Virus record (IMG/VR): IMGVR_UViG_3300009011_000002
Span: 62,001 to 126,000 of that record
DNA: 64,000 nucleotides
Strand: one strand, 5' to 3'
Shown in pieces: positions 10,087-58,875 of the stretch; within the stretch, counting starts at the first letter, position 1, and every line of letters begins with the position of its first letter. The translations under genes and the position numbers were made by a program. The notes below the pieces were generated by a model. The model was not told the DNA's origin. It saw nothing but the letters and a program-made list of their open reading frames with translations, and did no database searches.

Positions 10087-10116
10087 CCCTACTACCGCCC
10101 TAGGGCGGTAGTAGGG
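10087..10116. repeat. Perfect 30-bp palindrome at a convergent junction (probable bidirectional terminator)
   Basis: CCCTACTACCGCCCT|AGGGCGGTAGTAGGG, no U-tract. Confidence 0.75.
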
Positions 10117-10125
10117 TTATGTCTG

Positions 10126-10578
10126 CTACTTGGAATTTCTGAAACGGTAAGGTCTGAAATCGTTGTTGTCATACACAAAGATTTGACCATTGATGGACAC
10201 GAGTGCATCGTTGTGGTTGTTCACCACTTCGTTAAAGATTAACAAGTCCTTGGAATGCGACTTGTGTTTCTGGGCGACTGGGAGTTGGAACGCAATGTAC
10301 TGGAGCATGTCACGGTTGGTAAACTCGACAGGGAATTTACATTCCCAACCAAACACATGACCAGCAAGGTGAGGGTCTTTGGTTTCTGGGTCACGTATCA
10401 AAGACACCCGCCCTGCGTACACGCCCAGTTGGTACTTAAAGATAAGACCTTCTGGGACCTGTTCCAAGGAGAACCAAAACCCTCGACTTTCCCGCAGTCT
10501 ACATACCAGCAGCAGTCCTGCCAATGCCCAGACCACCGTCAATAGTAGGTTCAGCACGATCTCTGGAATCTCGAACAT
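10126..10578 (-). CDS. Hypothetical membrane protein (N-terminal TM helix)
   Basis: Likely start MFEIPEIVLNLLLTVVWALAGLLLV at 10578 with RBS AAGAAGG. Confidence 0.7.
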   Translation of the reverse strand: MFEIPEIVLNLLLTVVWALAGLLLVCRLRESRGFWFSLEQVPEGLIFKYQLGVYAGRVSLIRDPETKDPHLAGHVFGWECKFPVEFTNRDMLQYIAFQLPVAQKHKSHSKDLLIFNEVVNNHNDALVSINGQIFVYDNNDFRPYRFRNSK

Positions 10579-11326
10579 TGTGAGGTACCTTCTTACCAAA
10601 TATCCGTGTGTAGTTGTCTCTGACGAGTGTACCAATCAAAGCTGGATTATCCGCCACTGCCATGAAGTCCGCAATACTGCCTGGCTTGCTTTTTAAGACG
10701 GCTGCAGGAATACTCTGCCAGATGGTACCGTTTCTACCGTACATCGCTGAGAAGCCTTCTGAGAGCCTGTCACACCACTCTTCAGGGGAGACGGGTTCCT
10801 CAGTGATGACAGTGTTCTCCCGCACGTACTCCACCACCGCTTTCGCCGGGTTGGAAAACAGTACGTCGGTCATTACCCGTACTTCGTGAGCAATGGTAAT
10901 GGCTTCAGTGTCTACCGAGAGCCGGAAGGCCGACATACTCCGACGACGGCAGCTGTTCTGTATCTGTTTGATCTCTGTGTCGTCAAAGAATTCTCCAGCC
11001 TCCTCATTCAGGAACACCATGGCAAATGCCGAAGATGCATCATGCGGATGTTGACCTTGGTACGTCCTTCCCGTTTCCATCAAGAAGGTAACTGCATAGA
11101 TAAGCGACCGACGGTCCTCTTCAACCTCATGGATGTCACACATGTCGCGTGTGACTAAAACGGCATTCCGTAGCCAGTGATGATCGAATCCTTCAGGGTT
11201 ACTCTTCATGCGGTTAAACAACTTCATGATGAAGTTTAGAGGAAGGTACGTTCCCGCTGTTGTTAAGATGTCCTGGAAGGATTCCAGGTCCTTTAGATCT
11301 TGTGCGCGAAAACGACGTCCTGACAT
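10499..11326 (-). CDS. HD-domain-like protein with degenerate metal ligands
   Basis: HHWLRNAVLVTRDMCD...LIYAVTFLMETGRT...HPHDASSAFAMVFL...EIKQIQNSCRR follows the HD-fold pattern, with HD replaced by ME. Confidence 0.55.
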   Translation of the reverse strand: MSGRRFRAQDLKDLESFQDILTTAGTYLPLNFIMKLFNRMKSNPEGFDHHWLRNAVLVTRDMCDIHEVEEDRRSLIYAVTFLMETGRTYQGQHPHDASSAFAMVFLNEEAGEFFDDTEIKQIQNSCRRRSMSAFRLSVDTEAITIAHEVRVMTDVLFSNPAKAVVEYVRENTVITEEPVSPEEWCDRLSEGFSAMYGRNGTIWQSIPAAVLKSKPGSIADFMAVADNPALIGTLVRDNYTRIFGKKVPHNVRDSRDRAEPTIDGGLGIGRTAAGM

Positions 11327-11358
11327 AACCAACTCCTAAGAAACAAAAATAAAAAGAA

Positions 11359-11378
11359 GCGAGGCCCGAAGGCCTCGT
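11359..11378 (-). terminator. Intrinsic terminator, cUUCGg loop
   Basis: GAGGCC-TTCG-GGCCTC followed by a T-rich tail on the minus strand. Confidence 0.75.
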
Positions 11379-11380
11379 GC

Positions 11381-11848
11381 TCAATCAACTTCCGTGAGGT
11401 TCTCGAAGTACTCGTCACGGTCAAAGTGATTCACAAGCTTCTCTGGCTTGCATTCGGCGTTGAGCGTTTTCACCATCTCCACTTGTTCGTAGAGGTAGCC
11501 AGTGATCACGCCACGCTGATCGTTTACTCCTACGGTCGTCATGCTTCTGCCTGCCACGATGTAGATCTCGCGGTTATCGACGCCTTCTTCTGCAGAGTAA
11601 CGGAATGACTTACCTATGTTGTTACCAGCGGCCGCTACGCTGTACTCAGGTTTACGGAGGTCCTCCCCATACAGAATGGTGAAGACATCGGTCACGGGGT
11701 TACGCGAAACTTGAAGGTGTTTCCCTTCCTTGGTTTCACATTTCAACACGAGGTCTTCAGGCACAGTAACCACTTGGTTTGCAGAGGCATTGACCGCAAA
11801 ACCCAGCACCATCAGAACAGCCATGTAGAACGAAGTAAACAGTTTCAT
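11381..11848 (-). CDS. Secreted/periplasmic protein with signal peptide
   Basis: MKLFTSFYMAVLMVLGFAVNASA gives an A-X-A cleavage site. Two Cys in the mature part. RBS GGAG. Confidence 0.75.
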   Translation of the reverse strand: MKLFTSFYMAVLMVLGFAVNASANQVVTVPEDLVLKCETKEGKHLQVSRNPVTDVFTILYGEDLRKPEYSVAAAGNNIGKSFRYSAEEGVDNREIYIVAGRSMTTVGVNDQRGVITGYLYEQVEMVKTLNAECKPEKLVNHFDRDEYFENLTEVD

Positions 11849-11885
11849 GTCATCTCCAAAGATTGATTAGTCAATCTCCCCAAAA

Positions 11886-11919
11886 AATAAAGACTGAGGA
11901 ATTACCCCCAGTCTTTATT
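11886..11919 (-). terminator. Intrinsic terminator
   Basis: AATAAAGACTG...CAGTCTTTATT stem with a T-run on the minus strand. Confidence 0.65.
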
Positions 11920-11940
11920 GATAGAGAAGTTGCATAGTGG

Positions 11941-12444
11941 TTAGATCATGCTGCCGCGAGGGATCGGGTTCTGGGAAGCGCTAATCGGCATGATGTGGGT
12001 GGTGCTGTTCGCCACACCGATGTGGTTGGTCTTGCATTTGACCATAGCACCGTAAAGGCTCTCGAGGTAGGAACCGATGTTCTCCTCGATGTCCCAGCTG
12101 GTCACCACCAGGCTGAACTGCGCCAGCGACAGCGCGCTATTACCAAGCAGCAGGGCCAGTTGTTTGTGCGAGTTGTGGACCAGCACGAACTTCTGACCGG
12201 TCCTGGGTGCATGGCGTTCAAACACCACCACGGTACCCAAGCAGGTGCCGACCAGGATCAGTCGACGTTCAGTGTGGGTGCACACCGACTTGACAACTTT
12301 GCCAGCTTCCAGAGGGAAGTCCATGGCGTTCTCGAAGTAACCGTTCTCGCTGCGCCAGGCCGAATTGAAAGGAACGGATTCCTTGATCTTCAGCAGGGCG
12401 TATTCAAAGGCTTTTTCGATTTCGATAGAAGGATCGTTACGCAT
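11941..12444 (-). CDS. Hypothetical early protein (about 167 aa)
   Basis: Start MRNDPSIEIEK at 12444 with RBS AGGA, directly downstream of an early promoter. Confidence 0.75.
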   Translation of the reverse strand: MRNDPSIEIEKAFEYALLKIKESVPFNSAWRSENGYFENAMDFPLEAGKVVKSVCTHTERRLILVGTCLGTVVVFERHAPRTGQKFVLVHNSHKQLALLLGNSALSLAQFSLVVTSWDIEENIGSYLESLYGAMVKCKTNHIGVANSTTHIMPISASQNPIPRGSMI

Positions 12445-12503
12445 GATTTGTTTTCCTATATAGGACAAAGGGTTAGTAGACTTTAATAGTCTCATTCACC
12501 CTA

Positions 12504-12520
12504 GTTATATAGGTCTGAAA
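12504..12520 (-). promoter_or_regulatory. Early (virion RNAP) promoter TTTCAGACCTATATAAC
   Basis: One of five copies of TTTSARACCTATATHAC. Resembles the phiKZ early TATATTAC consensus. Confidence 0.75.
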
Positions 12521-12581
12521 AAGAATGTAACTTAAATATAACCCGCACAGGCCAAAAGGCCTGTACGGGTTATAATCAGGA

Positions 12582-13325
12582 TCAGGACATCAGGTGGCTT
12601 GGAATCTTGATGCTGGGTACACGGGGTTTCACACAGTCAGGGCAACCACCCTTACACTGACCCTTTACTGGCTTGGTCAGTGGGCGGATGATCTTCATCA
12701 GGTGCGGGAACAGTTGCTCGCGCACTTCATCGAGACCATACGAAGCGTCGATGAGGGTGTAACGGTCAGCATCGGTCTTGTACAGGTCCAGGAAGACCTG
12801 CTGCATGGCTTCCTGCTGTTCCAGACTTGCCCGGTCGAACTTGTCACTCTGTTTCTCAGCGTCGCTGATACGCGATGCTGCGATGTACGGAGGGCAGGTG
12901 AAGATGAACGTCTTGTCTGGGTTGACCCCTACCACCAACTCGTGTAGCTGTTTCAGCTTCTCGAGTGGTAACCCGTCGTAGGTCGACTGGTAGGCAAACG
13001 TGGTATCACAGTAACGGTCGGAGACCACAACCCGACCGGATTCAATGGAAGGACGAATCACCTTGTTAACGTGATCCACCCGCGCAGCGTTAAACAGCAA
13101 CGCCACAGCCATGGGATCCAGCACGTCCAAAGGTTCTTTCGGATTAGCTCCTGGGAACCCCTCACGCACCAGCTTACGCAGATGCTCCGCGCAAAGGGTA
13201 CCACCAGGCTCACGGGTTAACACAGGATCGAGGTGGTGATCCTGGAACAACTTACCGATGTAATTACGAGCAGTGGACTTGCCCGTGCCTCCGATCCCTT
13301 CGAGGGTGATGAATGGCGCTGTCAT
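12582..13325 (-). CDS. tmk: Thymidylate kinase
   Basis: FITLEGIGGTGKST P-loop, TREPGG and SDRYCDTTFAYQ. Start at ATG 13325. Confidence 0.92.
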   Translation of the reverse strand: MTAPFITLEGIGGTGKSTARNYIGKLFQDHHLDPVLTREPGGTLCAEHLRKLVREGFPGANPKEPLDVLDPMAVALLFNAARVDHVNKVIRPSIESGRVVVSDRYCDTTFAYQSTYDGLPLEKLKQLHELVVGVNPDKTFIFTCPPYIAASRISDAEKQSDKFDRASLEQQEAMQQVFLDLYKTDADRYTLIDASYGLDEVREQLFPHLMKIIRPLTKPVKGQCKGGCPDCVKPRVPSIKIPSHLMS

Positions 13326-13332
13326 GATATCC

Positions 13333-13509: not shown

Positions 13510-13542
13510 GGAAGGTGCTCCTATTGATTATTTTCAATAGGA

Positions 13543-14838: not shown

Positions 14839-14849
14839 TCCCTTTCCCC

Positions 14850-15083: not shown

Positions 15084-15107
15084 TTTTACCCCCGAAGCAA
15101 AAATAAA

Positions 15108-15131
15108 ACAGGGAGCCCGAAGGCCCCCTGT
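15108..15131 (-). terminator. Intrinsic terminator, cUUCGg loop
   Basis: ACAGGGGGCC-TTCG-GGCTCCCTGT followed by TTTATTTTTG. Confidence 0.75.
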
Positions 15132-15136
15132 TACGA

Positions 15137-17771: not shown

Positions 17772-17880
17772 TGTGAGAAACCTCTTCTCTGTAGTAGTTA
17801 TAGATAAACACCCAATAGGACTACCAACGGAAAGGTGGGTTACCCGTCCGCCAGGAGGTAGTCCTGTTCGGTTCATGCAA

Positions 17881-17897
17881 GTGATATAGGTCTGAAA
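17881..17897 (-). promoter_or_regulatory. Early promoter TTTCAGACCTATATCAC
   Basis: Copy of the repeated early-promoter motif. Confidence 0.7.
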
Positions 17898-17913: not shown

Positions 17914-19137
17914 TCACTCAAGCCAATTGATACCGCGGTTGGTGAGGAAGGCAGCACGCACTACCTCGGCCACGGACAGATTGGCATCATCCAGCAGGAC
18001 CTGTAGATCCGGATTGGCTTCGTAGAACTTGGCGCGGTTTTCTGGCGCTGCCTCGAAGTACTTGGTCATCCGGTCAACCTTTTCTTTCTCGTCGTCAGAC
18101 ACGACGTCGGCGAGACCCATTTCTTCAATACCGGCGTAGCGGCTGAGTGGATCACGGCCTACGGGTTTATCACCCGCATGGAACTGGGTAGCCTTAGCAC
18201 CGGCGATGTACAACTTGCGGGCTTCTGCCAGCGCGGCGAAGCAGTCGACATTCGGACCAGGCTTGGTACCGGTGAGTTGTTCCAGAGCGAAACGCGCTTG
18301 GCGTTCTTCACGCGTAGGAATGCGGCTGATCACGCCGCCTTTGTGGACGTAGTGGGAGCCGTCAGGGCCGGTGACGCTGATGGATTCGAAACCTTGCTTG
18401 ACCAGCTCGTTAATGGTCAACGACGGATCAGGATCAGCTTCGTCGATGGTCACTTGGATCCAGTGCTTGTCGAAGACTTCCAGCATGTCGAGGAAGTCAG
18501 GCTTGACGTTCTGATGTGGGTACTGCGAGATGTTCAGCGCCAAGCGGTCGAAGTAGCTGGAGTTCAGGAACTTGCCGTCCAGCAGGTCTTCGAAGTACAT
18601 CACCGACGCTGGGTATTTGCCCAGTGCGTCTTCGAAGTTGTCGGCTAGATCGAAACGCTGAGCCATGTAGGCTACCAGATGACGCGCTTGTTCTTTGACG
18701 TCGTCGATGACGGCCATGTCCACCAGACTGTCGTCCAGGCCGATCAGACGCGTTGCCACGATCTTGAACAGGTCGTAGTTGGTCTGGAATTCGATCGCGC
18801 CGATACGGTTGCTGATGGCCACGTTGGTGTCGTTGTCGCTGGCAATGGTGCCCTTCGACCACGCCGTCGCGCGCACACCGGTGGAACGCATGTACTGGGC
18901 GATCAGTTTGGAGATGTAGACACGGACCACGTCAGTTTTACGGCTGCTGACGAAGACGCCCTTGATCAGGTGGGTGTCCGGGTCATTGACGTCGAACATG
19001 TTGGCCCATTCCTTTTCCGCGGTCGCGTACAGCGCTTGAATCACTGTGGCGGCACCGATAGCATCGCGCAGGCTGGTCAGGAAAGTCAGGTGATCCAACC
19101 ACAGGTTCTGCTGTTGCACGAGAGCTTGATCTTGCAT
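17914..19137 (-). CDS. Hypothetical protein, 407 aa
   Basis: Long ORF with RBS AGGAG and GC3-rich codons. Confidence 0.8.
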   Translation of the reverse strand: MQDQALVQQQNLWLDHLTFLTSLRDAIGAATVIQALYATAEKEWANMFDVNDPDTHLIKGVFVSSRKTDVVRVYISKLIAQYMRSTGVRATAWSKGTIASDNDTNVAISNRIGAIEFQTNYDLFKIVATRLIGLDDSLVDMAVIDDVKEQARHLVAYMAQRFDLADNFEDALGKYPASVMYFEDLLDGKFLNSSYFDRLALNISQYPHQNVKPDFLDMLEVFDKHWIQVTIDEADPDPSLTINELVKQGFESISVTGPDGSHYVHKGGVISRIPTREERQARFALEQLTGTKPGPNVDCFAALAEARKLYIAGAKATQFHAGDKPVGRDPLSRYAGIEEMGLADVVSDDEKEKVDRMTKYFEAAPENRAKFYEANPDLQVLLDDANLSVAEVVRAAFLTNRGINWLE

Positions 19138-39535: not shown

Positions 39536-39573
39536 CTATACCCTACGGCCCTTGTGGGGGCCGTAGGGTATAG
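39536..39573. repeat. 16-bp stem palindrome at a convergent junction
   Basis: CTATACCCTACGGCCC-TTGTGG-GGGCCGTAGGGTATAG. Confidence 0.75.
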
Positions 39574-41835: not shown

Positions 41836-41852
41836 GTAATATAGGTTTGAAA
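41836..41852 (-). promoter_or_regulatory. Early promoter TTTCAAACCTATATTAC
   Basis: Copy of the repeated motif with an exact TATATTAC. Confidence 0.75.
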
Positions 41853-42465: not shown

Positions 42466-42498
42466 TACTACCGTCCTGGCACTGCCAGGACGGTAGTA
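42466..42498. repeat. 16-bp stem palindrome, 1-nt loop, at a convergent junction
   Basis: TACTACCGTCCTGGCA-C-TGCCAGGACGGTAGTA. Confidence 0.75.
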
Positions 42499-47147: not shown

Positions 47148-47159
47148 GCGGCTATAAGC

Positions 47160-47192
47160 CTACCCCTACGGGCTCTGAGCCCGTAGGGGTAG
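47160..47192. repeat. 16-bp stem palindrome, 1-nt loop, at a convergent junction
   Basis: CTACCCCTACGGGCTC-T-GAGCCCGTAGGGGTAG, with CTATA/TATAG flanks. Confidence 0.75.
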
Positions 47193-47202: not shown

Positions 47203-48711
47203 TTACTTCCGACCTTGATCTGCCAAACTCAGGATCTTCAGTCCAGCTGCTGCACTGGTATGGATGTAGATGAATTCTTCCGTCTCCACCAACGTGCAGT
47301 AACGAATACCCGTGTCATTCCGAGTGTCCGTTGCTACCCATACCCGCACTTCTGGATCTTCCACCGAGTTGAACGCGTTCCGCTCAGGGATATCCAAACC
47401 GACCGACAACATGATCTCTACCGGCCGCACTGCTTTCGGGTGTTCAACCTTGACCTTGAACACTGTTTTCAGTTGATTGAAGTCAGGATGAAGCTTGAGC
47501 TTCTTCACACCCTTGGCGTTCTCTTCCTTCACGTAGATCTGATCCGTGATGTCGTAGAACTTGGTGTAACCGAAGGTGTTGTTCTCGTCGCGTTTCAAGA
47601 ACGCTTCGAACGTCACGTCAATGCTCACCAAGAAGTCGCGGATACGGTACGACATCAACACTGGCTTAATCAGCTCGATCAGCACAGGTCGTCCGTTGTT
47701 CTTGGTAATTGGCGAAACGAGGTTTTGTTTCTGCGGAATGGCTGGGAAGGTATCCAACAACCGCGCCACATCTTTCCGCACAAGGTTGTTCAAGTCCCCT
47801 GCACTCAAGTACCCGTCCGGGTTCTTGATCTTCTCACAAGTGAACGAGAACAACTTGTCCAGCAACTGGATAGGTCGTTTCGAATACAACTTGGAGTAGG
47901 TGACGTCAGGGGTGAGCTTCCCGTAATAGTTCTTGTCAGGCTCTACCTTGCCGAACCCGTACACCCGATAGCCCTCGTACTCGTTAAAGAACTCTTCCTT
48001 GTTGTTCGAGTTGAAGTACCACCGGGACGCACTGACAATCTTGTTAAAGTCAGATTCTGGATTCTCGTATTCCTTACGAGACATGATCGACACAGCAGGG
48101 TCGGTTTCTTTCGACCACACTGACGCCACTTCTGCCAGTTCGAGTTGGTCGTGGGCTTTCCGGTTACCCAGTCCACCCTCAGCCGAGCCGTGCAGGTCCA
48201 CGATAACCTTTTTGTCCAAGGACGCCATGGTTTCGAGGTGGCCAATGCATTCCAGGATCAATTGAAGTTCGGACGTACTGGGGATGTGTGTGCCCAGCTT
48301 GAAACCTTCCTTCTCTGCCGTGGAGCGTTTCAGTTTCAGCAGAGCATCCAACTCCTTATGCGGAGTGATTATGCACAGGTTCTTATAGACGGACCCGTGG
48401 ACCACGAACGGACGAATGGCTTCTCGGAAACCCTTCAATACCGCCTCGAGGTGACTGGCTGCATTAGGCACAACCATGGACACAATGTCTTGTACCACGA
48501 CCACTGTGTTCGCTCGTTGTTTGTTGCCTGTGTAGTAACCGTTGGAAGTGGCAACGTCTTTTGCCAGCTTCTTTTTGCCTTCCTCGTTAAGGTCGTAGGT
48601 GTACCCATGACCCCCGAGGTAATGAAGTTTCTTGGGCTTACCCCCAGTGACTTCCAAGACATTTGCAATCAGGTAAACAACCATGTTTACCGTCGGAGTA
48701 ATTTCTTCCAT
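47203..48711 (-). CDS. RNase H-fold protein (phiKZ gp155 position), catalytic residues apparently lost
   Basis: ASHLEAVLKGF, IITPHKEL and DLHGSAEGGLGNRKAHDQLELA resemble RNase HI motifs. Synteny fits. Confidence 0.55.
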   Translation of the reverse strand: MEEITPTVNMVVYLIANVLEVTGGKPKKLHYLGGHGYTYDLNEEGKKKLAKDVATSNGYYTGNKQRANTVVVVQDIVSMVVPNAASHLEAVLKGFREAIRPFVVHGSVYKNLCIITPHKELDALLKLKRSTAEKEGFKLGTHIPSTSELQLILECIGHLETMASLDKKVIVDLHGSAEGGLGNRKAHDQLELAEVASVWSKETDPAVSIMSRKEYENPESDFNKIVSASRWYFNSNNKEEFFNEYEGYRVYGFGKVEPDKNYYGKLTPDVTYSKLYSKRPIQLLDKLFSFTCEKIKNPDGYLSAGDLNNLVRKDVARLLDTFPAIPQKQNLVSPITKNNGRPVLIELIKPVLMSYRIRDFLVSIDVTFEAFLKRDENNTFGYTKFYDITDQIYVKEENAKGVKKLKLHPDFNQLKTVFKVKVEHPKAVRPVEIMLSVGLDIPERNAFNSVEDPEVRVWVATDTRNDTGIRYCTLVETEEFIYIHTSAAAGLKILSLADQGRK

Positions 48712-48815: not shown

Positions 48816-49757
48816 ATGATTGAATTATTAGGAGTTGGCCGGGTGCAAAAACGGCCAAAAGGGTTTGTTGTAAAAGAACCTGTCGCGATACCAACCGGCG
48901 TTAACGGCGCCATGGCGTGTGTCCACAACGACGACCTCTTTTTAGCAGGAGGCGCTAATGGAACCGTCACACTCACGTCTTTCAGGAAGTTTAACCTGCT
49001 GACCCGAAAGTGGACAGACTTGGCATTGCTTCCAAGAGGATTAGAAGGAGGCGTGCTTTCGGTTGTTGGTGGTAACATCTACCTGTTTGGCGGTGGTGTT
49101 ATGGTCAACGGGGCTATCTCTACTTATAACGCAAACCTCTACAAATACGACATCGAAAATAACGTGTGGTCTACGTTATCGGCGAGTCCTCTCGGTGGAC
49201 GTCGGTTGTTCACGGGTGAAGCCATCGGTAGAGTCCTGTATTACTTTGGTGGGTGGAACGGGGCAGAGATCAGCCGCGTTGAATCTTTCAACCTTGACAC
49301 GGGTGCTTGGACCACACTCCCGAACCTACCCGGTATCCGGCATGGCAACTACTGTGCAACCGATGGATCAAAGATTTACATCTTTGGTGGTCTAACAGAC
49401 GGAGGGGGGACAAGCAATAACGACGTTCTTGTATTTGACCCTTCCGTGAGCACGTCTGTCACTACACTGGTGACTACGCTTGCGAAACCACCTGTACGCA
49501 GCTATTCAATGCTCTACGTGGAGGAAAATAACCTTTACGTCTACGGCGGGTATGAAAACGGCAACGGCACTGCCGTCCGCAATGATTTCTGGGTATTGAA
49601 TCTGGCCACTAAGGAGTGGAAACAGATACCCCTCAGCGGGACACCGATCGACGGTCGAGGAAGTTCTGCCTACACTTACTGGAAAGGGGAGCTCCACGTC
49701 ATTGGGGGGTATAACCCAACCCGAGGGCGAATCACAGACCATATCTACATCATGTAA
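48816..49757 (+). CDS. Kelch-repeat (six-bladed beta-propeller) protein
   Basis: Six repeats of hydrophobic-x-x-GG...Y/F-D/N...W (LFLAGG, IYLFGG, LYYFGG, IYIFGG, LYVYGG, LHVIGG). Confidence 0.88.
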   Translation: MIELLGVGRVQKRPKGFVVKEPVAIPTGVNGAMACVHNDDLFLAGGANGTVTLTSFRKFNLLTRKWTDLALLPRGLEGGVLSVVGGNIYLFGGGVMVNGAISTYNANLYKYDIENNVWSTLSASPLGGRRLFTGEAIGRVLYYFGGWNGAEISRVESFNLDTGAWTTLPNLPGIRHGNYCATDGSKIYIFGGLTDGGGTSNNDVLVFDPSVSTSVTTLVTTLAKPPVRSYSMLYVEENNLYVYGGYENGNGTAVRNDFWVLNLATKEWKQIPLSGTPIDGRGSSAYTYWKGELHVIGGYNPTRGRITDHIYIM

Positions 49758-49813
49758 TAACTATTCCCCCACACCCATCCAAAAGGAAGGGTGCGGGGTA
49801 TATAGTTTGATGC

Positions 49814-51652: not shown

Positions 51653-52285
51653 ATGGCCGATACCAACATGATCCCCTCGATGAATGCGGCTGGTCGCTTT
51701 GAAGCGATTGCTCCGTTCGATCAGGTAGTGGATCCCGCGAAGTACTATGTGGTGGAGGGCTTGGAAACCATCGGCAAGATGGAGTCCCTGCACGTTAACC
51801 TCTACGACTTGATGTTTGCACCTATCGGTGTCCCGCAGGATCAGTACGGTACGGTACTCAGCCGTGCGCGTTCTCTGGGGGCCGTGGTGGTAACACTGAT
51901 GGACCGCAACCGGGTACCGACGTATGTGTTCAGTACGTACTTCAAATCCTTCCCGGTAACGGACGGTGTGTTGTATGAGAACATGGTACTGACCGCATCC
52001 CTGGGTCCTTGCCATCCTGATATGGCCACCGAACTCACCGACACCATGGAACACGTCAAGCAAACGATCCTGAACCGTCATGGGATCGATGCGACAGTTA
52101 GACTGGGTACGGTACCGCAAGTTGCTTACACCAGCCGCCTGCAACATGAAGCCTTTGAGAACACCCGTAAAGCCAAGATCACTGATAACCAAAGTGACGT
52201 GGCGCGTGTGTACGAGATGGAACAGTTGTTGCTGTCCAAGGATGCCTACATCGCTCAACTGGAAGCCAACCAGGTAAAACCATAA
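51653..52285 (+). CDS. Conserved protein, phiKZ gp158-like (210 aa)
   Basis: Coupled to the upstream gene. Assignment is by synteny. Confidence 0.6.
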   Translation: MADTNMIPSMNAAGRFEAIAPFDQVVDPAKYYVVEGLETIGKMESLHVNLYDLMFAPIGVPQDQYGTVLSRARSLGAVVVTLMDRNRVPTYVFSTYFKSFPVTDGVLYENMVLTASLGPCHPDMATELTDTMEHVKQTILNRHGIDATVRLGTVPQVAYTSRLQHEAFENTRKAKITDNQSDVARVYEMEQLLLSKDAYIAQLEANQVKP

Positions 52286-52295
52286 AGCAGCCATA

Positions 52296-52333
52296 AGCCC
52301 CTACCCCGCCCTTATTGGGTTGGGGTAGGGGTT
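52296..52333. repeat. Imperfect palindrome at a convergent junction
   Basis: AGCCCCTACCCCGCCC-TTATT-GGGTTGGGGTAGGGGTT. Confidence 0.7.
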
Positions 52334-53772: not shown

Positions 53773-56613
53773 ATGTTAACTGACTTTTTCTCGGTAGGTG
53801 TTAAACAGACTGGGAACTACGTGCACATTACCGGAGTTTCCTACAAGGCACTCGAACGCGATATCAGTAAGTTCTACAGCACCAGTCTACTCAACAAGTA
53901 CCAAATTCGTCGTGAGTCGTGGGACACCATCAAGGTCCACAACTTCTTCTTGGTGGAGCTCTATGAGATCCTCCGTGAACTGTTGCAGCTGCGTACAATG
54001 GCCAGCCGCCGTCGGGATCTGGCAGAGCTCAGACACCTGCTGGAAACCGAAACGTGGATCAAGGATACTGTTAACCCAGTAGGCACTCCTTTTGATTTCA
54101 GTAAGCTGGATCGTTTTCAAACCAAGCTCTTTCCGGAACAACGGATGTTCTTGGAACAGTACCCGTTGTTGGTTAAGAGTTTCCACCTGAAAGGTTTCCT
54201 GCTGGACGCAGTACCCGGCAGTGGTAAAGCGATGCCCCTCGACACCAAGGTTAAAGTCCCCGGTGGGTGGCGAGAGATAGGAGACCTTAAAATAGGCGAC
54301 CTAGTAATAGGACCCAAAGGGAACACCACTACGGTCACTGCCGTCTACCCGCAAGGTGAAACGGATGTGTACCGGTTCATCTTAGAAGATGGTCGTACAG
54401 TGGATTCTCACCCTCTGCATTTGTGGGAAGTAGTAGAGACTGACTTCGAGGGTACTACTGAACCTCGTACTGCGGTGACTACAACGATTGATATCGTTAA
54501 CCACTTCAGTCAGTTCAGTTATCACCTCCCCATGGTCGGTGAAATAGGAGGTATTGACCTCTCCACAACCACTGACTGCCTGGGGGTTGCCCAAACCCTT
54601 CTTCGCTCTGACGTAGATATTGGGAGCTCAGTGTTAGAACTCCCGTACAACGATCGCTTCAACATTACCAAGGCCATGCTGGAAGCATCTGGCATTCAAC
54701 TGGACGGTAAAGCGATTGCCTTCTCCAGTGATGGACACCAAGCCGCAGAGAACTTCCGAGACCTCATGTGGAGTCTGGGTGGTCGTGCGATAGTAGGTAC
54801 CTTTGAAGGTAAATCGGTTTGCTGGTTCTTCCACCGTGAAGTGGTCGCGCTAGTGAACAACCTGATCATCGGTGATCCTGCTTTGACCATCAACCTGGAA
54901 GAACACCAACGCACACTGTTGGGTATCCGGGCAGTACACAAGGTAGACCCCGAGGAAACCGTCTGTATTGCGATTGACAGCGAAGATAAGCTGTTTGTGG
55001 TAGATGACTACGTCGTCACCCATAACACGTTCACGTCGCTCGTATGGAGCCAATTGGTGAGTGATGCACCCACCGTGGTATTGGCCCCGCTGAACGTGGT
55101 AGACGAAGTGTGGGTGAAGGAGTTTGTCAAGCACTTCAAGAAGCCACCAAAGGTCTGGACAACCAAGTCCGGGGTAGCCCTTAAAGAGGGTTATGATTAC
55201 TACATCGTGCACCACGACTACTTGCAACGGGAAGGGTTCAACATCCTCTTGCGGTTCCTCGAGACCTACTGCAAGAACAACAAGGTCAAGCCTAAGCTGA
55301 TCATCGACGAGTCCCACAACTTCAACGAGATCAAAGCCAAGCAGACCCAGCGGCTTATTCAGTTGGCGGATGCAAACGTGTTCTCGGATACGTTGCCAAT
55401 GTCGGGTACGTTGTTCAAGGCCTTGGGGAGCGAGCTGTTCCCGATGCAGTGCCTGATCGACAAACACTTCGACACCATTGCCCGTCAGTTCTTCTTGGCG
55501 AGCTACGGTCGTAACCGACCTGCACTGATGACGTTGCTGTCTCACCGGATCGGTAAGGTGAAGTTTACTATTCCTGAACTGGTCGGGATGGGAGCGGCTC
55601 CTCCATTCGAGATCGTCAAGGTCCAAGTACCAGGCAGTGACAAGTACACGCTCGATGCGATCCGCTTGCAAATGCAGACGTACATCGCCGAACGGGTCAA
55701 GTTTTACAACCACCACATGCCTGCGTTTATCACGTTCTACAATGACGTGATCAGTCGTTACGAGTTCTCCATTCGTACTCACCCAAAGGAACTGGAGGAG
55801 CTGCGTCGCTACAAGACAATCGTTCGCCGCTTCCAGACCCAAGGGTACAACAACTTCACTGATGCACAGGACAGTGTGTTCTGTAAAGAGGTGGAGGTAA
55901 ACATTGAGCGAGACCTCAAAGGTAAAGAACTGGCAGATTTCCGTAACGTGAAGTCAGCAGTGAAGTACCTCGGGTTGAAACTCCGTGGGGAGGCATTGGG
56001 TAACGTACTGGGCAGGGCCCGTATCAACGCGATCAAGGATATGATCGAATATGCGGACCTTCCCAAGTACATCGACAACGTGGAGAAGAAGACGGTTATC
56101 TTTACCTCGTACGTCGAATCCCTTCAATTGACGAATGACCATTTGCGAGCGAAGGGTTACAACCCAGTCATGGTGTACGGGGCTACCAACCACGAACGGG
56201 ACATGCTGGTGGAGCAGTTCAAAACGGATCCTCGGGTAAACCCCCTGGGTGCGACCTACTCCAGCTTGAAGGAAGGCTACCCCCTCCTGATGGCCAACCA
56301 GATCATCTCGTTGGATGCACCGTATCGAGACGGGGAGATCAAGCAGGTACAAGCCCGTGTATGGCGAACCGGCCAGGACACCCAGTGTTTCTTCTGGATG
56401 CTCGATCTGGACACCGGCACAAAGCTGAACATCACCACCCGTAGCTTGGACATCTTGGCATGGAGCCGTGACCAAGTAGACACCCTTCTGGGGCGCTTGG
56501 ACACACCTGTAGCGTTCACAAACGTTACCGGGCAGGAGATGTTAGACCTGAGTGAAGAACCCTTCTCTAAACCGCTCCGATCCAGTAACAGCGTTTTGTC
56601 TCTCTTTAACTAG
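53773..56613 (+). CDS. SF2/SNF2-like helicase precursor containing an intein (about 680 aa after splicing)
   Basis: AVPGSGK|intein|TFT, IIDESHN, PMSGT, TVIFT, SLKEGY and QVQARVWRTGQ. Start at ATG 53773 with RBS AAGGA. Confidence 0.9.
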   Translation: MLTDFFSVGVKQTGNYVHITGVSYKALERDISKFYSTSLLNKYQIRRESWDTIKVHNFFLVELYEILRELLQLRTMASRRRDLAELRHLLETETWIKDTVNPVGTPFDFSKLDRFQTKLFPEQRMFLEQYPLLVKSFHLKGFLLDAVPGSGKAMPLDTKVKVPGGWREIGDLKIGDLVIGPKGNTTTVTAVYPQGETDVYRFILEDGRTVDSHPLHLWEVVETDFEGTTEPRTAVTTTIDIVNHFSQFSYHLPMVGEIGGIDLSTTTDCLGVAQTLLRSDVDIGSSVLELPYNDRFNITKAMLEASGIQLDGKAIAFSSDGHQAAENFRDLMWSLGGRAIVGTFEGKSVCWFFHREVVALVNNLIIGDPALTINLEEHQRTLLGIRAVHKVDPEETVCIAIDSEDKLFVVDDYVVTHNTFTSLVWSQLVSDAPTVVLAPLNVVDEVWVKEFVKHFKKPPKVWTTKSGVALKEGYDYYIVHHDYLQREGFNILLRFLETYCKNNKVKPKLIIDESHNFNEIKAKQTQRLIQLADANVFSDTLPMSGTLFKALGSELFPMQCLIDKHFDTIARQFFLASYGRNRPALMTLLSHRIGKVKFTIPELVGMGAAPPFEIVKVQVPGSDKYTLDAIRLQMQTYIAERVKFYNHHMPAFITFYNDVISRYEFSIRTHPKELEELRRYKTIVRRFQTQGYNNFTDAQDSVFCKEVEVNIERDLKGKELADFRNVKSAVKYLGLKLRGEALGNVLGRARINAIKDMIEYADLPKYIDNVEKKTVIFTSYVESLQLTNDHLRAKGYNPVMVYGATNHERDMLVEQFKTDPRVNPLGATYSSLKEGYPLLMANQIISLDAPYRDGEIKQVQARVWRTGQDTQCFFWMLDLDTGTKLNITTRSLDILAWSRDQVDTLLGRLDTPVAFTNVTGQEMLDLSEEPFSKPLRSSNSVLSLFN
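54229..55026 (+). mobile_element. Class 3 intein (266 aa, Ala1, W-C-T triad) with a decayed LAGLIDADG remnant
   Basis: Begins AMPLDT; block B HLW; block F TVCIAID; ends VVTHN, followed by Thr+1. Rare codons (ATA, CTA) are enriched relative to the host gene. Confidence 0.92.
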
Positions 56614-56624
56614 GACGATTCCTC

Positions 56625-57047
56625 ATGGTTGACATCGTAGAAAATGCTGAAAGCTTCCCGCCCGTGCCACTGCTCGCGATGGGTGATAAAGCACTCGGTG
56701 GGGGCGAACAAGCACCCGCTAACAAACAGGCTGTTGCACTGGCCAAACGCACCGCAAACGTCAAGAAAAACCTTGATGATTTGATCGGGGTGTCGATTCA
56801 TCTTATTGGGAAGCTCGGGGGTCAAGATGAACTCGAAGCCATCGACACTGACGGCCTTCTCAAGTGGACTGGGTACATCGTTAACGGTGTTCTCACTGTT
56901 TGGGACGGCGCAGAGTGGGTAGGTATTAACGCTTTGGTTAGTGAGGCTCCTGGCAACGCTCTCTCCTTAGGGGAGGACGGTAAGCTGTACGTTTCAAACG
57001 ACATCAATGCTGACATTGTTCAGTCCTACAACGCCGCAAAGGAATAG
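56625..57047 (+). CDS. Short fibre/appendage-like protein, 140 aa
   Basis: The N-terminus (ALGGGEQAPANKQAVALAKRT) resembles the Mu/P2-type tail-fibre attachment motif. Also VWDGAEW and GNALSLGEDGKLYV. Confidence 0.5.
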   Translation: MVDIVENAESFPPVPLLAMGDKALGGGEQAPANKQAVALAKRTANVKKNLDDLIGVSIHLIGKLGGQDELEAIDTDGLLKWTGYIVNGVLTVWDGAEWVGINALVSEAPGNALSLGEDGKLYVSNDINADIVQSYNAAKE

Positions 57048-57051
57048 TCTC

Positions 57052-57606
57052 ATGTCCCTCGAATTGCAATTGGTTGCACTTGCCCAAGCCGTCGCCGGTG
57101 ACGTCAAAGCCCTGAAAGCCGCCCACGGTGATCTGTCGGCCCTCGACACCACCGCCAAGGACAGCCTGGTTGCCGCCCTGAACGAAATCTTCGCCCTGGC
57201 TCAAGCTGGTGGTGGCGGTGGTGTGGCGATCGACGACGCCGCTGGTAACGGTGATACCACCGTTGTCTGGTCGGCCGACAAAGTCTTCGACGCGATCGAA
57301 GCTGCCAAGACTGCCGTTTCCAACGCAGTCAAATCCGACCTCCTGGGCGGTGCCGGTGAAGCATACGACACCTTCAAGGAACTGCAAGACCTGCTGGTCG
57401 GCCAAGACGACGCCGTCGCTGCACTGACCCAGCTGTTCAACAATGCCGTGCGCTTCGACCAGGCTCAAACCCTGACCGACCCGCAGAAGGCCTTCGCCCG
57501 TGGTAACATCGGCGCTGCTGCTGATGCCGACCTGGATGCTCTGGTCAGCGCTGTTGGCGACACCGAAGTCGACCTGGTTGCTGCGTACACCGCCGCCAAG
57601 GCGTAA
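57052..57606 (+). CDS. Head/tail fibre-like protein, 184 aa
   Basis: MSLELQLVALAQAVAGDVKAL...GDLSALDTTAKDSLVAALNE...WSADKV...GGAGEAYDTFKEL, a pattern common in phage appendage proteins. Very strong codon bias. Confidence 0.6.
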   Translation: MSLELQLVALAQAVAGDVKALKAAHGDLSALDTTAKDSLVAALNEIFALAQAGGGGGVAIDDAAGNGDTTVVWSADKVFDAIEAAKTAVSNAVKSDLLGGAGEAYDTFKELQDLLVGQDDAVAALTQLFNNAVRFDQAQTLTDPQKAFARGNIGAAADADLDALVSAVGDTEVDLVAAYTAAKA

Positions 57607-57609
57607 GCC

Positions 57610-57834
57610 GTGAGCCTCGCCGGTGCGATACTGGCGTTCGTTAGCGCAGTGGGCGCCGACATCAAAACCTTGTTTACCAACAAGGTTGATAAAGTCGCTG
57701 GCAAGGGGTTGTCGAGTAACGATTATACTGATGATGACAAGACTGCGCTTGCGTCGTTGGTATCGGGTGACGAGGTGGTGCAGCAAAAGCTGCTCGATCT
57801 CCAATCCCAGATCGATGCGTTGAAAGGCCCCTGA
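57610..57834 (+). CDS. Small fibre-like paralogue, 74 aa
   Basis: GTG start. AVGADIK matches the upstream gene's N-terminus, and KVDKVAGKGLSSNDYT is a fibre-type motif. Confidence 0.55.
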   Translation: MSLAGAILAFVSAVGADIKTLFTNKVDKVAGKGLSSNDYTDDDKTALASLVSGDEVVQQKLLDLQSQIDALKGP

Positions 57835-57849
57835 CAGGGTTTTATCTAA

Positions 57850-57885
57850 CTATAAGCTCCCTGGCTTAGGCTGGGGAGCTTATAG
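57850..57885. terminator. Hairpin CTATAAGCTCCC...GGGAGCTTATAG
   Basis: Inverted repeat between the fibre cassette and the kelch gene. Confidence 0.55.
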
Positions 57886-57913
57886 CCACTTCTCAATCCT
57901 GTTGGACACAACT

Positions 57914-58825
57914 ATGATCGAATCACATTTGTACCAGACCAAAGCTGCTCTCCCACCGCCTGTTATTGCGGGTGAATACAAGCAGAAAACTTCAGCTGCT
58001 GTTAACCGTACCGCGCACGCTGCCGTTGCAATTGACAACAAGATCTACGCGTTTGGTGGTAGTCATCAGATTCTTAACAGTGTCATGGAGGTCTATGACA
58101 TTGAAACCGATCAGTGGGCCAATCTTGCCACTCAGGGCACACCTTCCCCGAGACACTCCATTGCCAGTTGCGTCTTGAACGGTAAACTCTACATCTTTGG
58201 TGGTTCGACCACCACTGCTTGGAGTCCTACCGCTGAAGCTTACGTGTTTGACCCAGCCACCAACATCTGGACCAAACTGGCTAACCAACCTGCTGCGTTG
58301 TGTATCCAAACGGCCGTAGCCATCAAAGGTAAGATTTACCTCTTCGGTGGATTTAACGGGGGTAGCTCGGTTAACAGCTTCTACGAGTACGACCCTGTCA
58401 GTAACACGTACCGGACGATCCCTAACAGTCAGTCGGTCAGCCATGGTCACAGGGCAGTTAACATCGCTGACCGGATGTTTGTAGTGGGTGGAGTGGCAGG
58501 CACCCCCTTGTTGAGTCGTTGCGTTGCATACGACCCGACGGCTAATACGTGGGCGACATACGCCTCGTCCCCATTGGCTAACACGTACACGTTTACCGAT
58601 ACATTGGGTGGGTACCTTTACATGTTTGGCGGGAGTCGTAATACAGACACCACCACGCATAACAGGTTATTCAGGTTCCACCCACCCAGCAACACTTGGG
58701 ACGAACTCCCTACCGGGGCTCAAGCGGGTTACTACGGTGTTATGATTCCCGTCGAAGATCGGTTGTATCTGCACGGTGGTCGGAACTCCACCACGTTGTT
58801 CCCTGCGTTGTGGGAAATCACCTAA
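57914..58825 (+). CDS. Kelch-repeat (six-bladed beta-propeller) protein
   Basis: Six repeats (IYAFGG, LYIFGG, IYLFGG, MFVVGG, LYMFGG, LYLHGG). Confidence 0.88.
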   Translation: MIESHLYQTKAALPPPVIAGEYKQKTSAAVNRTAHAAVAIDNKIYAFGGSHQILNSVMEVYDIETDQWANLATQGTPSPRHSIASCVLNGKLYIFGGSTTTAWSPTAEAYVFDPATNIWTKLANQPAALCIQTAVAIKGKIYLFGGFNGGSSVNSFYEYDPVSNTYRTIPNSQSVSHGHRAVNIADRMFVVGGVAGTPLLSRCVAYDPTANTWATYASSPLANTYTFTDTLGGYLYMFGGSRNTDTTTHNRLFRFHPPSNTWDELPTGAQAGYYGVMIPVEDRLYLHGGRNSTTLFPALWEIT

Positions 58826-58847
58826 AAGCAAAAAAGAAAACCAATGG

Positions 58848-58875
58848 CCTACCTCTCCCAATTGGGAGAGGTAGG
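58848..58875. repeat. Perfect 28-bp palindrome at a convergent junction
   Basis: CCTACCTCTCCCAA|TTGGGAGAGGTAGG. Confidence 0.75.

What the first reader, a model, noticed from the sequence alone, without database searches (positions are those of the whole stretch)
10087..58875. Family of CTAC...GTAG palindromes without U-tracts at convergent gene junctions
Seen: six of the seven convergent junctions (10087, 39536, 42466, 47160, 52296, 58848) carry long stems (14-16 bp in five, about 17 bp and imperfect in one) with 0-6-nt loops. Their outer arms contain (C)CTAC and GTAG(G), and they have no poly-T tail. The seventh (about 49770-49805) is imperfect and lacks the motif. The hairpins at 1253 and 60029 carry the motif in the opposite order (GTAG...CTAC). 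The leftward early blocks instead use ordinary terminators with T-tails, three of them with cUUCGg loops (11359, 15108, 61587). Established: GTAG is the tetranucleotide at the foot of bacterial REP hairpins recognised by RAYT transposases. Inference: conserved sequence beyond pairing suggests a protein-recognised element, such as a phage-RNAP-specific bidirectional terminator, an RNA-processing site or a DNA cruciform.
Basis: partly seen in the sequence, partly recalled or inferred. Interest (0 to 1): 0.62.

Follow-up and report, generated by a model that had tools for sequence, protein, structure and literature searches.

The report
Two-way terminator hairpins of jumbo phage
The CTAC...GTAG palindromes are real and far beyond chance, and they are most likely two-way transcription stop signals of an EL-like "phage-nucleus" jumbo phage, carrying a stem motif shared by many related phages of different hosts but absent from phiKZ.

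Summary
The window is part of a 226.8-kb EL-like jumbo phage (phiKZ-type, "chimallivirus") from a rhizosphere metagenome.

- **Placement.** Every clear convergent gene junction in the genome carries a 13-19-bp, almost always perfect, palindrome. CTAC lies near the foot of the 5' arm in 12 of 13. Arm shuffles expect 2.7 of 25 strong hairpins to have it; 15 do.
- **Conservation.** The same core, (C)CTAC(C)...(G)GTAG(G), recurs in phages EL, RisingSun, OBP, Miami, VP4B, FishSpeaker, Aeromonas PS1 and partly SPN3US and Goslar. It also recurs at orthologous junctions of ten uncultured relatives whose stems are otherwise different. It is absent from phiKZ, RAY, PCH45 and SA002.
- **RNA level.** G:T mismatches exceed A:C on the sense strand, and pairing is perfect where both strands are transcribed.
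- **Tail.** There is no poly-T, but many hairpins are followed by TTAT(G)NYYG. This resembles the tail of the published, experimentally mapped phiKZ terminator motif.

Best reading: these are bidirectional terminators of the conserved chimallivirus terminator class, with a lineage-specific stem core. No transcript 3' ends were available for this phage or any CTAC-bearing relative, so termination itself is inferred. The REP/RAYT link is rejected. What reads the CTAC core, if anything, is untested.

The parts
10087..10116 (.). Perfect 15-bp palindrome CCCTACTACCGCCCT/AGGGCGGTAGTAGGG. It lies between a virion-protein gene (9149-10054, +) and the EL gp004 homolog (10126-10635, -).
   Evidence: (-34.8 kcal/mol, z = -6.1). 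The orthologous EL junction (gp004/gp005) has a CCCTAC hairpin at EL 2312.
10117..10126 (+). Tail TTATGTCTGC directly after the hairpin. It is not the stop codon of the opposing gene.
   Evidence: The same 9-mer, TTATGTCTG, follows the hairpin at genome position 196507 on the other strand.
39536..39573 (.). Perfect 16-bp palindrome CTATACCCTACGGCCC, loop 6. It lies 2 nt after the 739-aa + gene and 6 nt before the end of the 367-aa - gene.
   Evidence: Ortholog junction J_E keeps a hairpin in 10 of 10 relatives and in EL, and 8 of 11 (G000 plus ten relatives) have CTAC.
42466..42498 (.). Perfect 16-bp palindrome TACTACCGTCCTGGCA, loop 1.
   Evidence: The 95%-identical relative L013 shows two compensatory double substitutions in the upper stem while the TACTACC foot is unchanged.
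47160..47192 (.). Perfect 16-bp palindrome CTACCCCTACGGGCTC, loop 1. It lies between the 268-aa + gene and the ribonuclease-family gene (47203-48711, -).
   Evidence: The minus-strand tail GCTTATAGCCGC is at 47148-47159.
52296..52333 (.). Imperfect 16-pair hairpin in which GCCCCUACCCCGCCC pairs with GGGUUGGGGUAGGGGU. The minus-strand tail CTTATGGCTGC is at 52285-52295.
   Evidence: In junction J_A, 8 of 11 sequences have CCCTAC-type stems, and the TTATGGCTGC tail is conserved.
58848..58875 (.). Perfect 14-bp palindrome CCTACCTCTCCCAA/TTGGGAGAGGTAGG.
   Evidence: Relative L014 has CCTACCTCTCCCA at the matching place.
49767..49798 (.). Imperfect hairpin without CTAC. It lies at the junction created by a lineage-specific Kelch-repeat gene (48816-49757, +).
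   Evidence: The gene is absent from this position in L013-L022.
1253..1281 (-). Tandem (-|-) terminator hairpin with the motif in reverse order (GGTAGCC...GGCTACC). It is followed on the sense strand by TTTTCATCAT.
60029..60063 (-). Tandem hairpin in reverse order (CAGTAGCCC...GGGCTACTG). It is fused to an early-promoter cassette at 60001-60013.
15107..15132 (-). Short internal terminator of a leftward early operon, with a UUCG loop and the tail UUUUAUUUUUGC. There are equivalents at about 11352-11374 and 61582-61609.
41836..41848 (-). Early-type promoter AAACCTATATTAC. There are further copies on the minus strand at 12504, 17881, 60001 and 63695. These drive the leftward operons that end at the palindromes.
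   Evidence: The CTATATTAC core is shared with phiKZ, VP4B and FishSpeaker.

Best explanation
**What it is.** The palindromes are bidirectional transcription terminators (3'-end-forming RNA hairpins) of an EL-like chimallivirus.

**How it works.** A transcript arriving from either side folds the same 13-19-bp stem, with a C/U-rich 5' arm and a G/A-rich 3' arm. The elongating phage RNA polymerase stops just after the stem. A TTAT(G)NYYG element often sits there and takes the place of a U-tract. Because the element must work on both strands it is a perfect Watson-Crick palindrome. The tail of one direction is often the complement of the leader of the other, giving ATAAC...GTTAT feet.

**The CTAC core.** The (C)CTAC(C)/(G)GTAG(G) core sits 0-5 bp from the stem foot. 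It is a lineage-specific sequence requirement of this terminator class, where phiKZ-like phages use CCCTCC/GGAGGG.

**Shown here.**
- Existence, placement and statistics of the hairpins.
- Conservation across phages of different hosts.
- RNA-level pairing signatures.
- The tail motif.

**Inferred.**
- That termination, rather than only 3'-end protection, happens here.
- That a phage-encoded polymerase or factor reads the CTAC core.
For: **1. Placement.**
- The hairpins lie 2-30 nt after the stop codons of both convergent genes. Only 1 of 26 strong hairpins is inside a gene.

**2. Family identity of the phage.**
- 119 of 206 genes have EL homologs, at a median 44% amino-acid identity.
- The early-promoter consensus CTATATTAC is the phiKZ type.

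**3. Published precedent.**
- phiKZ 3' ends mapped by ONT-cappable-seq fall at a conserved hairpin, CCYCCCC-loop-GGGRRGG followed by TTATKYYGT. Six bidirectional terminators lie between convergent genes (PMC10914365).
- Phage 201phi2-1 has 15 bidirectional terminators. Eight tested terminators work in vivo (PMC11512511).

**4. Same architecture here.**
- TTAT occurs in 22 of 50 G000 tails, against an intergenic background of 5.6%.
- TTAT[GAT][GTC][CT][CT]G occurs in 12 of 58 tails, out of only 38 such sites in the whole genome (Poisson p about 1e-21).
- In tandem contexts the tail is on the sense-downstream side: 15 versus 4 in G000, and 17 versus 4 in EL.

**5. RNA level.**
- Over six genomes, sense-strand G:T mismatches number 61 and A:C mismatches 25 (p = 1.3e-4).
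- Convergent hairpins are perfect in 87 of 104 cases, tandem hairpins in 184 of 292.

**6. Motif selection.**
- Hairpins with CTAC in the 5' arm, with shuffle expectation in brackets: G000 16/46 (3.2), EL 20/57 (3.4), Miami 27/64 (5.8), FishSpeaker 17/55 (5.3), VP4B 14/50 (3.9), phiKZ 1/99 (4.2).
- Convergent 54/77 versus tandem 38/188 (odds ratio 9.3, p = 3e-14).
- At four orthologous junctions in G000 plus ten relatives, 29 of 44 hairpins keep CTAC although the stems have turned over.
- G000 and L013 differ by compensatory substitutions above an unchanged foot.
Against: - No transcript 3' ends exist for this phage or for any CTAC-bearing relative. No RNA run holds the sequence.
- Half of the window's palindromes (39536, 42466, 58848) have no recognisable TTAT tail on either side.
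- CTAC is frequent but not obligatory. At orthologous junctions it is replaced by CCCTCCC-type stems, CTAA, CTAG, GTAC or the reversed order.
- Dinucleotide-preserving shuffles of these short arms regenerate CTAC almost as often as observed. The signal can therefore also be described as 'the A's sit in T-A-C context'.
- Termination by chimallivirus RNA polymerases has not been reconstituted in vitro, to my knowledge.
Confidence: 0.78

Rival explanations
1. The hairpins do not stop the polymerase. Instead they act after transcription, as 3'-end stabilisers against exonucleases or as sites recognised by an RNase or an RNA-binding protein. The protein could be, for example, a phage-nucleus mRNA handling factor, with CTAC/GUAG as its recognition core.
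For: - There is no U-tract.
- Stems are long and very stable, -24 to -36 kcal/mol.
- The sequence is conserved beyond pairing and independently of the host.
- A conserved ribonuclease-family gene (47203-48711) tracks the same clade, though this may simply reflect common descent.
Against: - The closest experimentally studied elements, the phiKZ and 201phi2-1 hairpins with TTAT tails, were mapped as primary termination sites, and some terminate in reporter assays.
- The oriented TTAT(G)NYYG tail is what a polymerase-level signal predicts.
- Stems of 13-19 bp are shorter than classical RNase III substrates (established knowledge).
Confidence: 0.12
2. The hairpins are terminators, but the CTAC core is not read by anything. 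On this view it is a by-product of a G-poor 5' arm, a need for a few weak U-A pairs near the foot, and spread or inheritance of terminator cassettes within one phage lineage.
For: - CTAC is replaceable at orthologous junctions.
- Dinucleotide-preserving shuffles nearly reproduce its frequency.
- Its distribution fits one clade, with loss elsewhere.
- Terminator-promoter cassettes do recur in the genome.
Against: - Mononucleotide shuffles give 5-6-fold fewer CTAC arms in five genomes whose GC content ranges from 39% to 53%.
- A's sit in TAC context 4-5 times more often than expected.
- The order is oriented, CTAC first: 54 of 77 convergent hairpins in the five genomes have CTAC in the 5' arm, and none of the 13 in G000 has GTAG there.
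- The motif persists across genomes at about 35-50% protein identity where stems share nothing else.
Confidence: 0.3
3. The palindromes act as DNA. They could be cruciforms, binding sites for a dimeric protein, REP-like elements mobilised by a RAYT-type transposase, or recombination or replication signals.
For: - The palindromes are perfect, with loops of 0-1 nt.
- GTAG is the tetranucleotide of bacterial REP elements (established knowledge).
- EL encodes a TnpB-type protein and an SbcD-like nuclease.
Against: - The genome has no Y1/RAYT transposase: the best match scores 14.7 bits against a 23-bit cut-off, and it lies inside the 2592-aa gene.
- CTAC-to-GTAG spacing varies from 12 to more than 22 nt, so there is no fixed dimer geometry (sequences).
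- The elements sit strictly at gene 3' ends.
- Related tandem hairpins tolerate G:T but not A:C on the sense strand.
- The tail is oriented with transcription.
Confidence: 0.04

Closest known systems
Conserved intrinsic terminator motif of phiKZ (Putzeys et al. 2024, PMC10914365) and motif A of 201phi2-1 (PMC11512511), including their bidirectional terminators between convergent genes
   Same: - The virus family and transcription system are the same, with phage multisubunit RNA polymerases.
- The hairpin sits just after the stop codon.
- The 5' arm is C-rich and the 3' arm G-rich.
- A TTAT-type tail replaces a U-run: phiKZ 86 of 121 tails, G000 24 of 58.
- Both are used in both directions at convergent junctions.
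   Different: - Stems here are about twice as long (13-19 bp versus 7-9 bp).
- The core is CCTAC/GTAGG instead of CCCTCC/GGAGGG. phiKZ has 1 CTAC arm in 99 and no CCTACC...GGTAGG hairpin.
- The tail G is one position further out.
- No 3'-end mapping exists for any CTAC-type phage.
Canonical bacterial bidirectional intrinsic terminators (A-tract, hairpin, U-tract)
   Same: - A single symmetric hairpin between convergent genes serves both strands.
- The flank of one strand is the complement of the tail of the other.
   Different: - There is no A-tract or U-tract.
- None of the palindromes passes a scan requiring 5 T in 8 positions.
- The stem sequence is conserved.
- The presumed polymerase is phage-encoded.
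REP elements and RAYT transposases of gamma-proteobacteria
   Same: - Both are extragenic palindromes.
- Both contain the tetranucleotide GTAG/CTAC.
   Different: - No RAYT gene is present.
- GTAG here is paired in the 3' arm.
- The elements occur in phage genomes of many different hosts.
- There is one element per gene junction rather than dispersed or clustered arrays.
T4-type promoter-early stem-loop (PeSL) regulatory cassettes (PMC2839356, seen)
   Same: - Both are repeated stem-loop plus promoter units at gene boundaries.
- G000 has four copies of a hairpin-adjacent early-promoter cassette.
   Different: - The CTAC palindromes at convergent junctions have no promoter attached.
- Their copies are not sequence repeats of one another beyond the short core.

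Membership tests
Canonical Rho-independent terminator | Stable GC-rich hairpin just downstream of a gene | tested here: met
   Energies are -24 to -36 kcal/mol with z of -4 to -6. The hairpins lie 2-30 nt after stop codons.
Canonical Rho-independent terminator | Run of U (at least 5 T in 8) directly after the stem | tested here: not met
   None of the palindromes at 39536, 42466, 47160 or 52296 is reported by the T-tail scan. The tails are listed.
phiKZ-type conserved chimallivirus terminator | Host genome is a phiKZ-like (chimallivirus) phage with its own RNA polymerases | tested here: met
   119 of 206 genes are homologous to EL genes. EL annotates the nuclear shell protein, PhuZ and split RNA polymerase beta subunits. 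The early promoter CTATATTAC is shared.
phiKZ-type conserved chimallivirus terminator | Pyrimidine/C-rich 5' arm and purine/G-rich 3' arm | tested here: met
   The 5' arms are 42% C and 17% G. The orientation is CTAC first in 12 of 13 convergent hairpins.
phiKZ-type conserved chimallivirus terminator | TTATKYYGT-like tail after the stem | tested here: inconclusive
   The tail is present on at least one side in 3 of 6 window palindromes and 9 of 14 genome-wide. Overall 12 of 58 tails match, against about 0.1 expected. Three window palindromes have none.
phiKZ-type conserved chimallivirus terminator | Stem consensus CCYCCCC / GGGRRGG with a 4-nt A/T-rich loop | tested here: not met
   Stems are 13-19 bp with a CCTAC core. 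phiKZ itself has 1 CTAC arm in 99. Some orthologous junctions in relatives do carry CCCTCCC stems.
phiKZ-type conserved chimallivirus terminator | Transcript 3' ends map to the element | not testable with these tools
   No RNA run holds this phage. No transcriptome of a CTAC-type phage was found.
REP/RAYT element | Cognate Y1 (RAYT) transposase | tested here: not met
   The best PF01797 match scores 14.7 bits, below the 23-bit cut-off, and lies inside a 2592-aa ORF.
REP/RAYT element | Unpaired GTAG 5' of an imperfect hairpin | tested here: not met
   GTAG is in the 3' arm and is Watson-Crick paired with CTAC.
RNase III processing site | About 20 bp or more of double-stranded RNA, often with internal loops, between cistrons of one transcript | tested here: inconclusive
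   Stems are 13-19 bp, mostly perfect, and lie between convergent rather than co-transcribed genes. Cleavage is not testable here.

The most novel reading that the evidence does not exclude
Chimallivirus RNA polymerases, or a dedicated phage factor, read a short sequence code at the foot of the terminator hairpin. One large branch uses CCUAC/GUAGG: EL, RisingSun, OBP, Miami, the Vibrio, Shewanella and Aeromonas phages, and this phage. The phiKZ branch uses CCCUCC/GGAGGG. On this reading termination in phage-nucleus phages is sequence-specific and orthogonal to the host, and it is strongest where convergent transcription must be insulated.
Probability: 0.3. Interest if true: 0.7.

Novelty: new variant of a known kind. 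Interest (0 to 1): 0.5.

Why it matters
- **Open mechanism.** How the non-canonical multisubunit RNA polymerases of phage-nucleus phages terminate is not known. Only phiKZ and 201phi2-1 have mapped terminators.
- **Testable contrast.** A second stem code is conserved across phages of at least six host genera and concentrated at convergent junctions. This sets up a direct comparison between CCTAC-type and CCCTCC-type stems, and between the polymerases of the two branches.
- **Annotation.** The motif gives a practical mark for gene ends and operon boundaries in the many uncultured EL-like jumbo phages.
- **Synthetic biology.** It offers candidate compact bidirectional terminators.
- **Tractable model.** EL is cultivable and carries the same motif, so the experiments are feasible.

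Tried and rejected
- **REP/RAYT.** Rejected: there is no Y1 transposase, and EL's 'transposase' is a TnpB.
- **Fixed-spacing dimer DNA site.** Rejected because the CTAC-to-GTAG spacing varies.
- **Promoter-likeness of CCTAC.** The EL early promoter is AAACCTACATTAT and the G000 one is AAACCTATATTAC. The idea was considered and dropped. The CTATATTAC promoter core is shared by phiKZ, which lacks CTAC hairpins.
- **'CTAC terminators serve late genes only'.** Rejected: leftward early-promoter operons also end at them.
- **Known RNA families.** No Rfam hit in the window.
- **Close relatives.** Megablast against the phage collection found none. An IMG/VR scan with the 367-aa protein also found none.
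- **Expression data.** No RNA run holds the sequence. Laying metagenome contigs showed relatives about 88-90% identical, but the tool does not print the hairpin letters. Relatives were obtained instead through protein look-ups.
- **Dinucleotide-preserving shuffles of arms.** Uninformative for arms this short.
- **Literature.** Searches for a described CCTAC/GGTAGG terminator motif found nothing relevant. The 201phi2-1 supplement is not held. Hertveldt et al. 2005, the EL genome paper, is not in the library and could not be checked.
- **Caveat on gene calls.** Gene calls used for junction classes come from a crude codon-score caller of my own. Several spurious '+' calls in the window were corrected by synteny with the relatives.

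Full report
**Where the window comes from.** The window is bases 62001-126000 of a 226,773-bp virus record with direct terminal repeats and 52.8% GC. It has no near-identical record in the phage collection. Its 2592-aa gene is about 50% identical to a protein of Pseudomonas phage EL. Of 206 crudely called genes, 119 have EL homologs at a median 44% identity, in conserved order. EL annotates the nuclear shell protein, PhuZ tubulin and split RNA polymerase beta subunits. The phage is therefore an EL-like, phiKZ-type 'phage-nucleus' jumbo phage. The only full holder among public runs is a rhizosphere metagenome, and no RNA run holds the sequence.

The imperfect one at 52296-52333 folds to -38.5 kcal/mol and pairs CCCCUACCCC with GGGGUAGGGG. 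The seventh junction hairpin (49767-49798) lacks the motif. The reversed hairpins at 1253 and 60029 and the three UUCG-loop, T-tailed terminators are also as described. The junction at 10087 is truly convergent, because the two minus ORFs to its right are homologs of EL gp004 and gp003.

**Genome-wide picture and chance.** Hairpin scans give about 25 strong intergenic hairpins and only one inside a gene. Random sequence of this composition would give about 0.03 perfect hairpins of 13 bp or more. Every clear convergent junction has a palindrome:
- In genome coordinates they are at 18169, 25362, 48798, 59920, 72087, 101536, 104466, 109160, 114296, 120848, 137044, 183373, 196507, 204939 and 219051.
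- CTAC is in the 5' arm of 15 of 25 strong hairpins. Shuffled arms give 2.66 +/- 1.55, with a maximum of 9 in 5000.
- At convergent junctions 12 of 13 have CTAC. The thirteenth has CTATAC.
- The first CTAC starts 0-4 nt from the stem foot in 13 of 15 cases.
- Sub-forms are TACTAC(C), seen six times, and CCCTAC, seen seven times.

**The motif is conserved in distant relatives.**
- Phage EL has more than 20 intergenic hairpins with (CC)CTAC(C)...(G)GTAG(GG), at both convergent and tandem junctions.
- Orthologous convergent junctions of G000 and EL both carry hairpins. Most have CTAC, although the rest of each stem differs.
- Through homologs of the ribonuclease-family gene at 47203-48711 I fetched ten syntenic loci from uncultured relatives. 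They are 95% to 53% identical in that protein and come from contigs of up to about 243 kb.
- At the four junctions orthologous to window 52296, 47160, 42466 and 39536, a long hairpin is present in all of them. 29 of 44 hairpins have CTAC.
- The others have CCCTCCC-type stems, CTAA, CTAG, GTAC or the reversed order.
- G000 and its 95% relative differ at 42466 by two compensatory double substitutions above an unchanged TACTACC foot.

**Same pipeline on six complete genomes.** Counts are hairpins with CTAC in the 5' arm out of all intergenic hairpins, with the shuffle expectation in brackets.

| Phage | CTAC arms / hairpins | Shuffle expectation |
|---|---|---|
| G000 | 16/46 | 3.2 |
| EL | 20/57 | 3.4 |
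| Klebsiella phage Miami | 27/64 | 5.8 |
| Shewanella phage FishSpeaker | 17/55 | 5.3 |
| Vibrio phage VP4B | 14/50 | 3.9 |
| phiKZ | 1/99 | 4.2 |

- In phiKZ the top arm words are CCCTC and CCTCC.
- In Miami, VP4B and FishSpeaker the consensus is long: (T)ATAACTCCTACYCCC, loop, GGGRGTAGGAGTTAT(A).
- Pattern scans add Erwinia phage RisingSun, Pseudomonas phage OBP and Aeromonas phage PS1 as carriers. SPN3US has about six such hairpins and Goslar two or three.
- RAY, PCH45 and SA002 have none.
- The motif therefore follows phage lineage, not host.
- In the five carrier genomes it is concentrated at convergent junctions: 54/77 versus 38/188 at tandem junctions (odds ratio 9.3, p = 3e-14).

**The hairpins act as RNA.**
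- In tandem hairpins of the six genomes, mismatches read on the sense strand are G:T 61 times and A:C 25 times (p = 1.3e-4). In G000 the counts are 16 versus 4.
- Where both strands are transcribed, pairing is perfect more often: 87/104 versus 184/292.
- Loops are often GNRA-like on one strand.
- CTAC-to-GTAG spacing ranges from 12 to more than 22 nt. This rules out a fixed-geometry dimer site on DNA (sequences).

**There is a tail, but it is not poly-T.**
- None of the palindromes passes a canonical T-tail scan.
- TTAT lies within the stem end to +14 in 22 of 50 G000 tails. Background is 2.3% genome-wide and 5.6% in intergenic DNA. In EL the count is 33 of 62.
- Aligned on TTAT, the G000 tail reads TTAT-(R/T)-(T/G)-Y-Y-G-(C).
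- 12 of 58 tails match TTAT[GAT][GTC][CT][CT]G, out of only 38 such sites in the whole genome (p about 1e-21).
- At orthologous junctions the tail (G)TTATGGCTGC or TTATAGYYGC is conserved and is separate from the opposing gene's stop codon.
- In tandem contexts the tail is on the sense-downstream side: G000 15 versus 4, EL 17 versus 4.
- In the window the tail is present at 10117-10126 (+), 47148-47159 (-) and 52285-52295 (-). It is absent at 39536, 42466 and 58848.
- Many relatives fold the tail into the stem foot, as ATAAC...GTTAT. That is what a symmetric, two-way version of 'hairpin plus TTAT' would look like.

**What is known.**
- ONT-cappable-seq of phiKZ mapped 133 termination regions. 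Most of the intrinsic ones share the motif BCCYCCCCHWWDGGGRRGGBYTTATKYYGT. Six overlapping bidirectional terminators lie between convergent genes (PMC10914365).
- Phage 201phi2-1 has 132 termination sites, 15 of them bidirectional. Its main motif resembles the phiKZ one, and eight tested terminators work in a reporter assay in the host (PMC11512511).
- The G000 elements share the phage family, position, arm asymmetry, TTAT-type tail and bidirectional use. They differ in stem length and in the CCTAC core.
- I found no paper describing the CCTAC form. The 2005 EL genome paper is not in the library.

**Relation to promoters and operons.**
- G000 has about 15 copies of an early-type promoter, AAACCTATATTAC. 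All are on the minus strand. The core is shared with phiKZ, VP4B and FishSpeaker.
- Leftward operons from these promoters contain short T-tailed hairpins internally. They end at CTAC palindromes, for example promoter 41836 to hairpin 39536 and promoter 60001 to hairpin 58848.
- Both early leftward transcription and the rightward transcription of virion genes therefore meet at these elements. A 'late-only' terminator class is not supported.
- The resemblance between the promoter's CCTA(Y)A and the hairpin's CCTAC does not discriminate, because phiKZ has the promoter but not the hairpin motif.

**Rejected readings.**
- REP/RAYT: the genome has no Y1 transposase, and GTAG is paired rather than free. 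EL's annotated transposase is a TnpB.
- Rfam has no match in the window.

**Limits.**
- No 3'-end data exist for any CTAC-type phage, so termination is inferred by analogy with phiKZ and from sequence signatures.
- Junction classes rest on my own crude gene caller, corrected in the window by synteny and homology.
- Dinucleotide-preserving shuffles cannot break the motif in arms this short. The enrichment can therefore equally be stated as 'the A's in the C-rich arm sit in T-A-C context' (30 observed against 6.7 expected in G000).
- Whether CTAC is read by a polymerase or factor, or is a lineage habit, is open.

**Verdict.** This is a real, conserved family of bidirectional terminator hairpins. 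It is a new sequence variant of the known chimallivirus terminator class, and its mechanism can be tested in phage EL.

Noticed in passing
window 12504-12536 and 60001-60033 (minus strand); also genome positions 170516 and 209136: There are four copies of a roughly 33-nt cassette, TTTAAGTTACA(K)T...TC-AGACCTATAT(W)AC. It is an early-type promoter with a conserved upstream part. Each copy sits directly downstream (on the minus strand) of a terminator hairpin. This resembles the terminator-promoter cassettes of T4-type phages.
   Followed up: partly
window 48816-49757 (+): A Kelch-repeat protein gene (Pfam Kelch_1 and others) sits between the ribonuclease-family gene and the 154-aa gene only in this genome. 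In relative L013 a Kelch gene lies on the other side of the ribonuclease gene. The convergent junction it creates has the only palindrome without CTAC.
   Followed up: partly
whole genome G000 and EL: CTAG is about 8-fold depleted genome-wide in G000 (111 observed, 879 expected) and about 5-fold in EL (155 observed, 824 expected). Even so, it occurs in several terminator arms, for example CCTAGC in five EL arms.
   Followed up: no
window 47203-48711 (-) and loci L013-L022: The ribonuclease-family protein (phrog_3265) has 114 homologs, on many uncultured contigs of up to about 243 kb, so the EL-like clade is large. One locus (L022) is a 232.8-kb contig inside a Salmonella enterica assembly (GCA_023797775.1). 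Full-length homologs occur in the CCTAC-motif phages. RAY, PCH45, Goslar and SPN3US match only the C-terminal half.
   Followed up: partly
whole genome G000: All of the roughly 15 early-type promoter matches (AAACCTATATTAC, up to 2 mismatches, intergenic) lie on the minus strand. Early transcription is therefore entirely leftward in this orientation.
   Followed up: partly
upstream regions in G000 and EL: The word ATTTTATG recurs upstream of genes in both genomes. It may be the late-promoter TATG element known from phiKZ (from memory, not checked here). It shares TTATG with the terminator tail.
   Followed up: no
window 17810-17872: An inverted repeat ACCCAATAGGACTACC / GGTAGTCCTGTTCGGT with 31 nt between its arms lies next to the early promoter at 17881. 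It contains CTACC...GGTAG but is not a compact hairpin.
   Followed up: no
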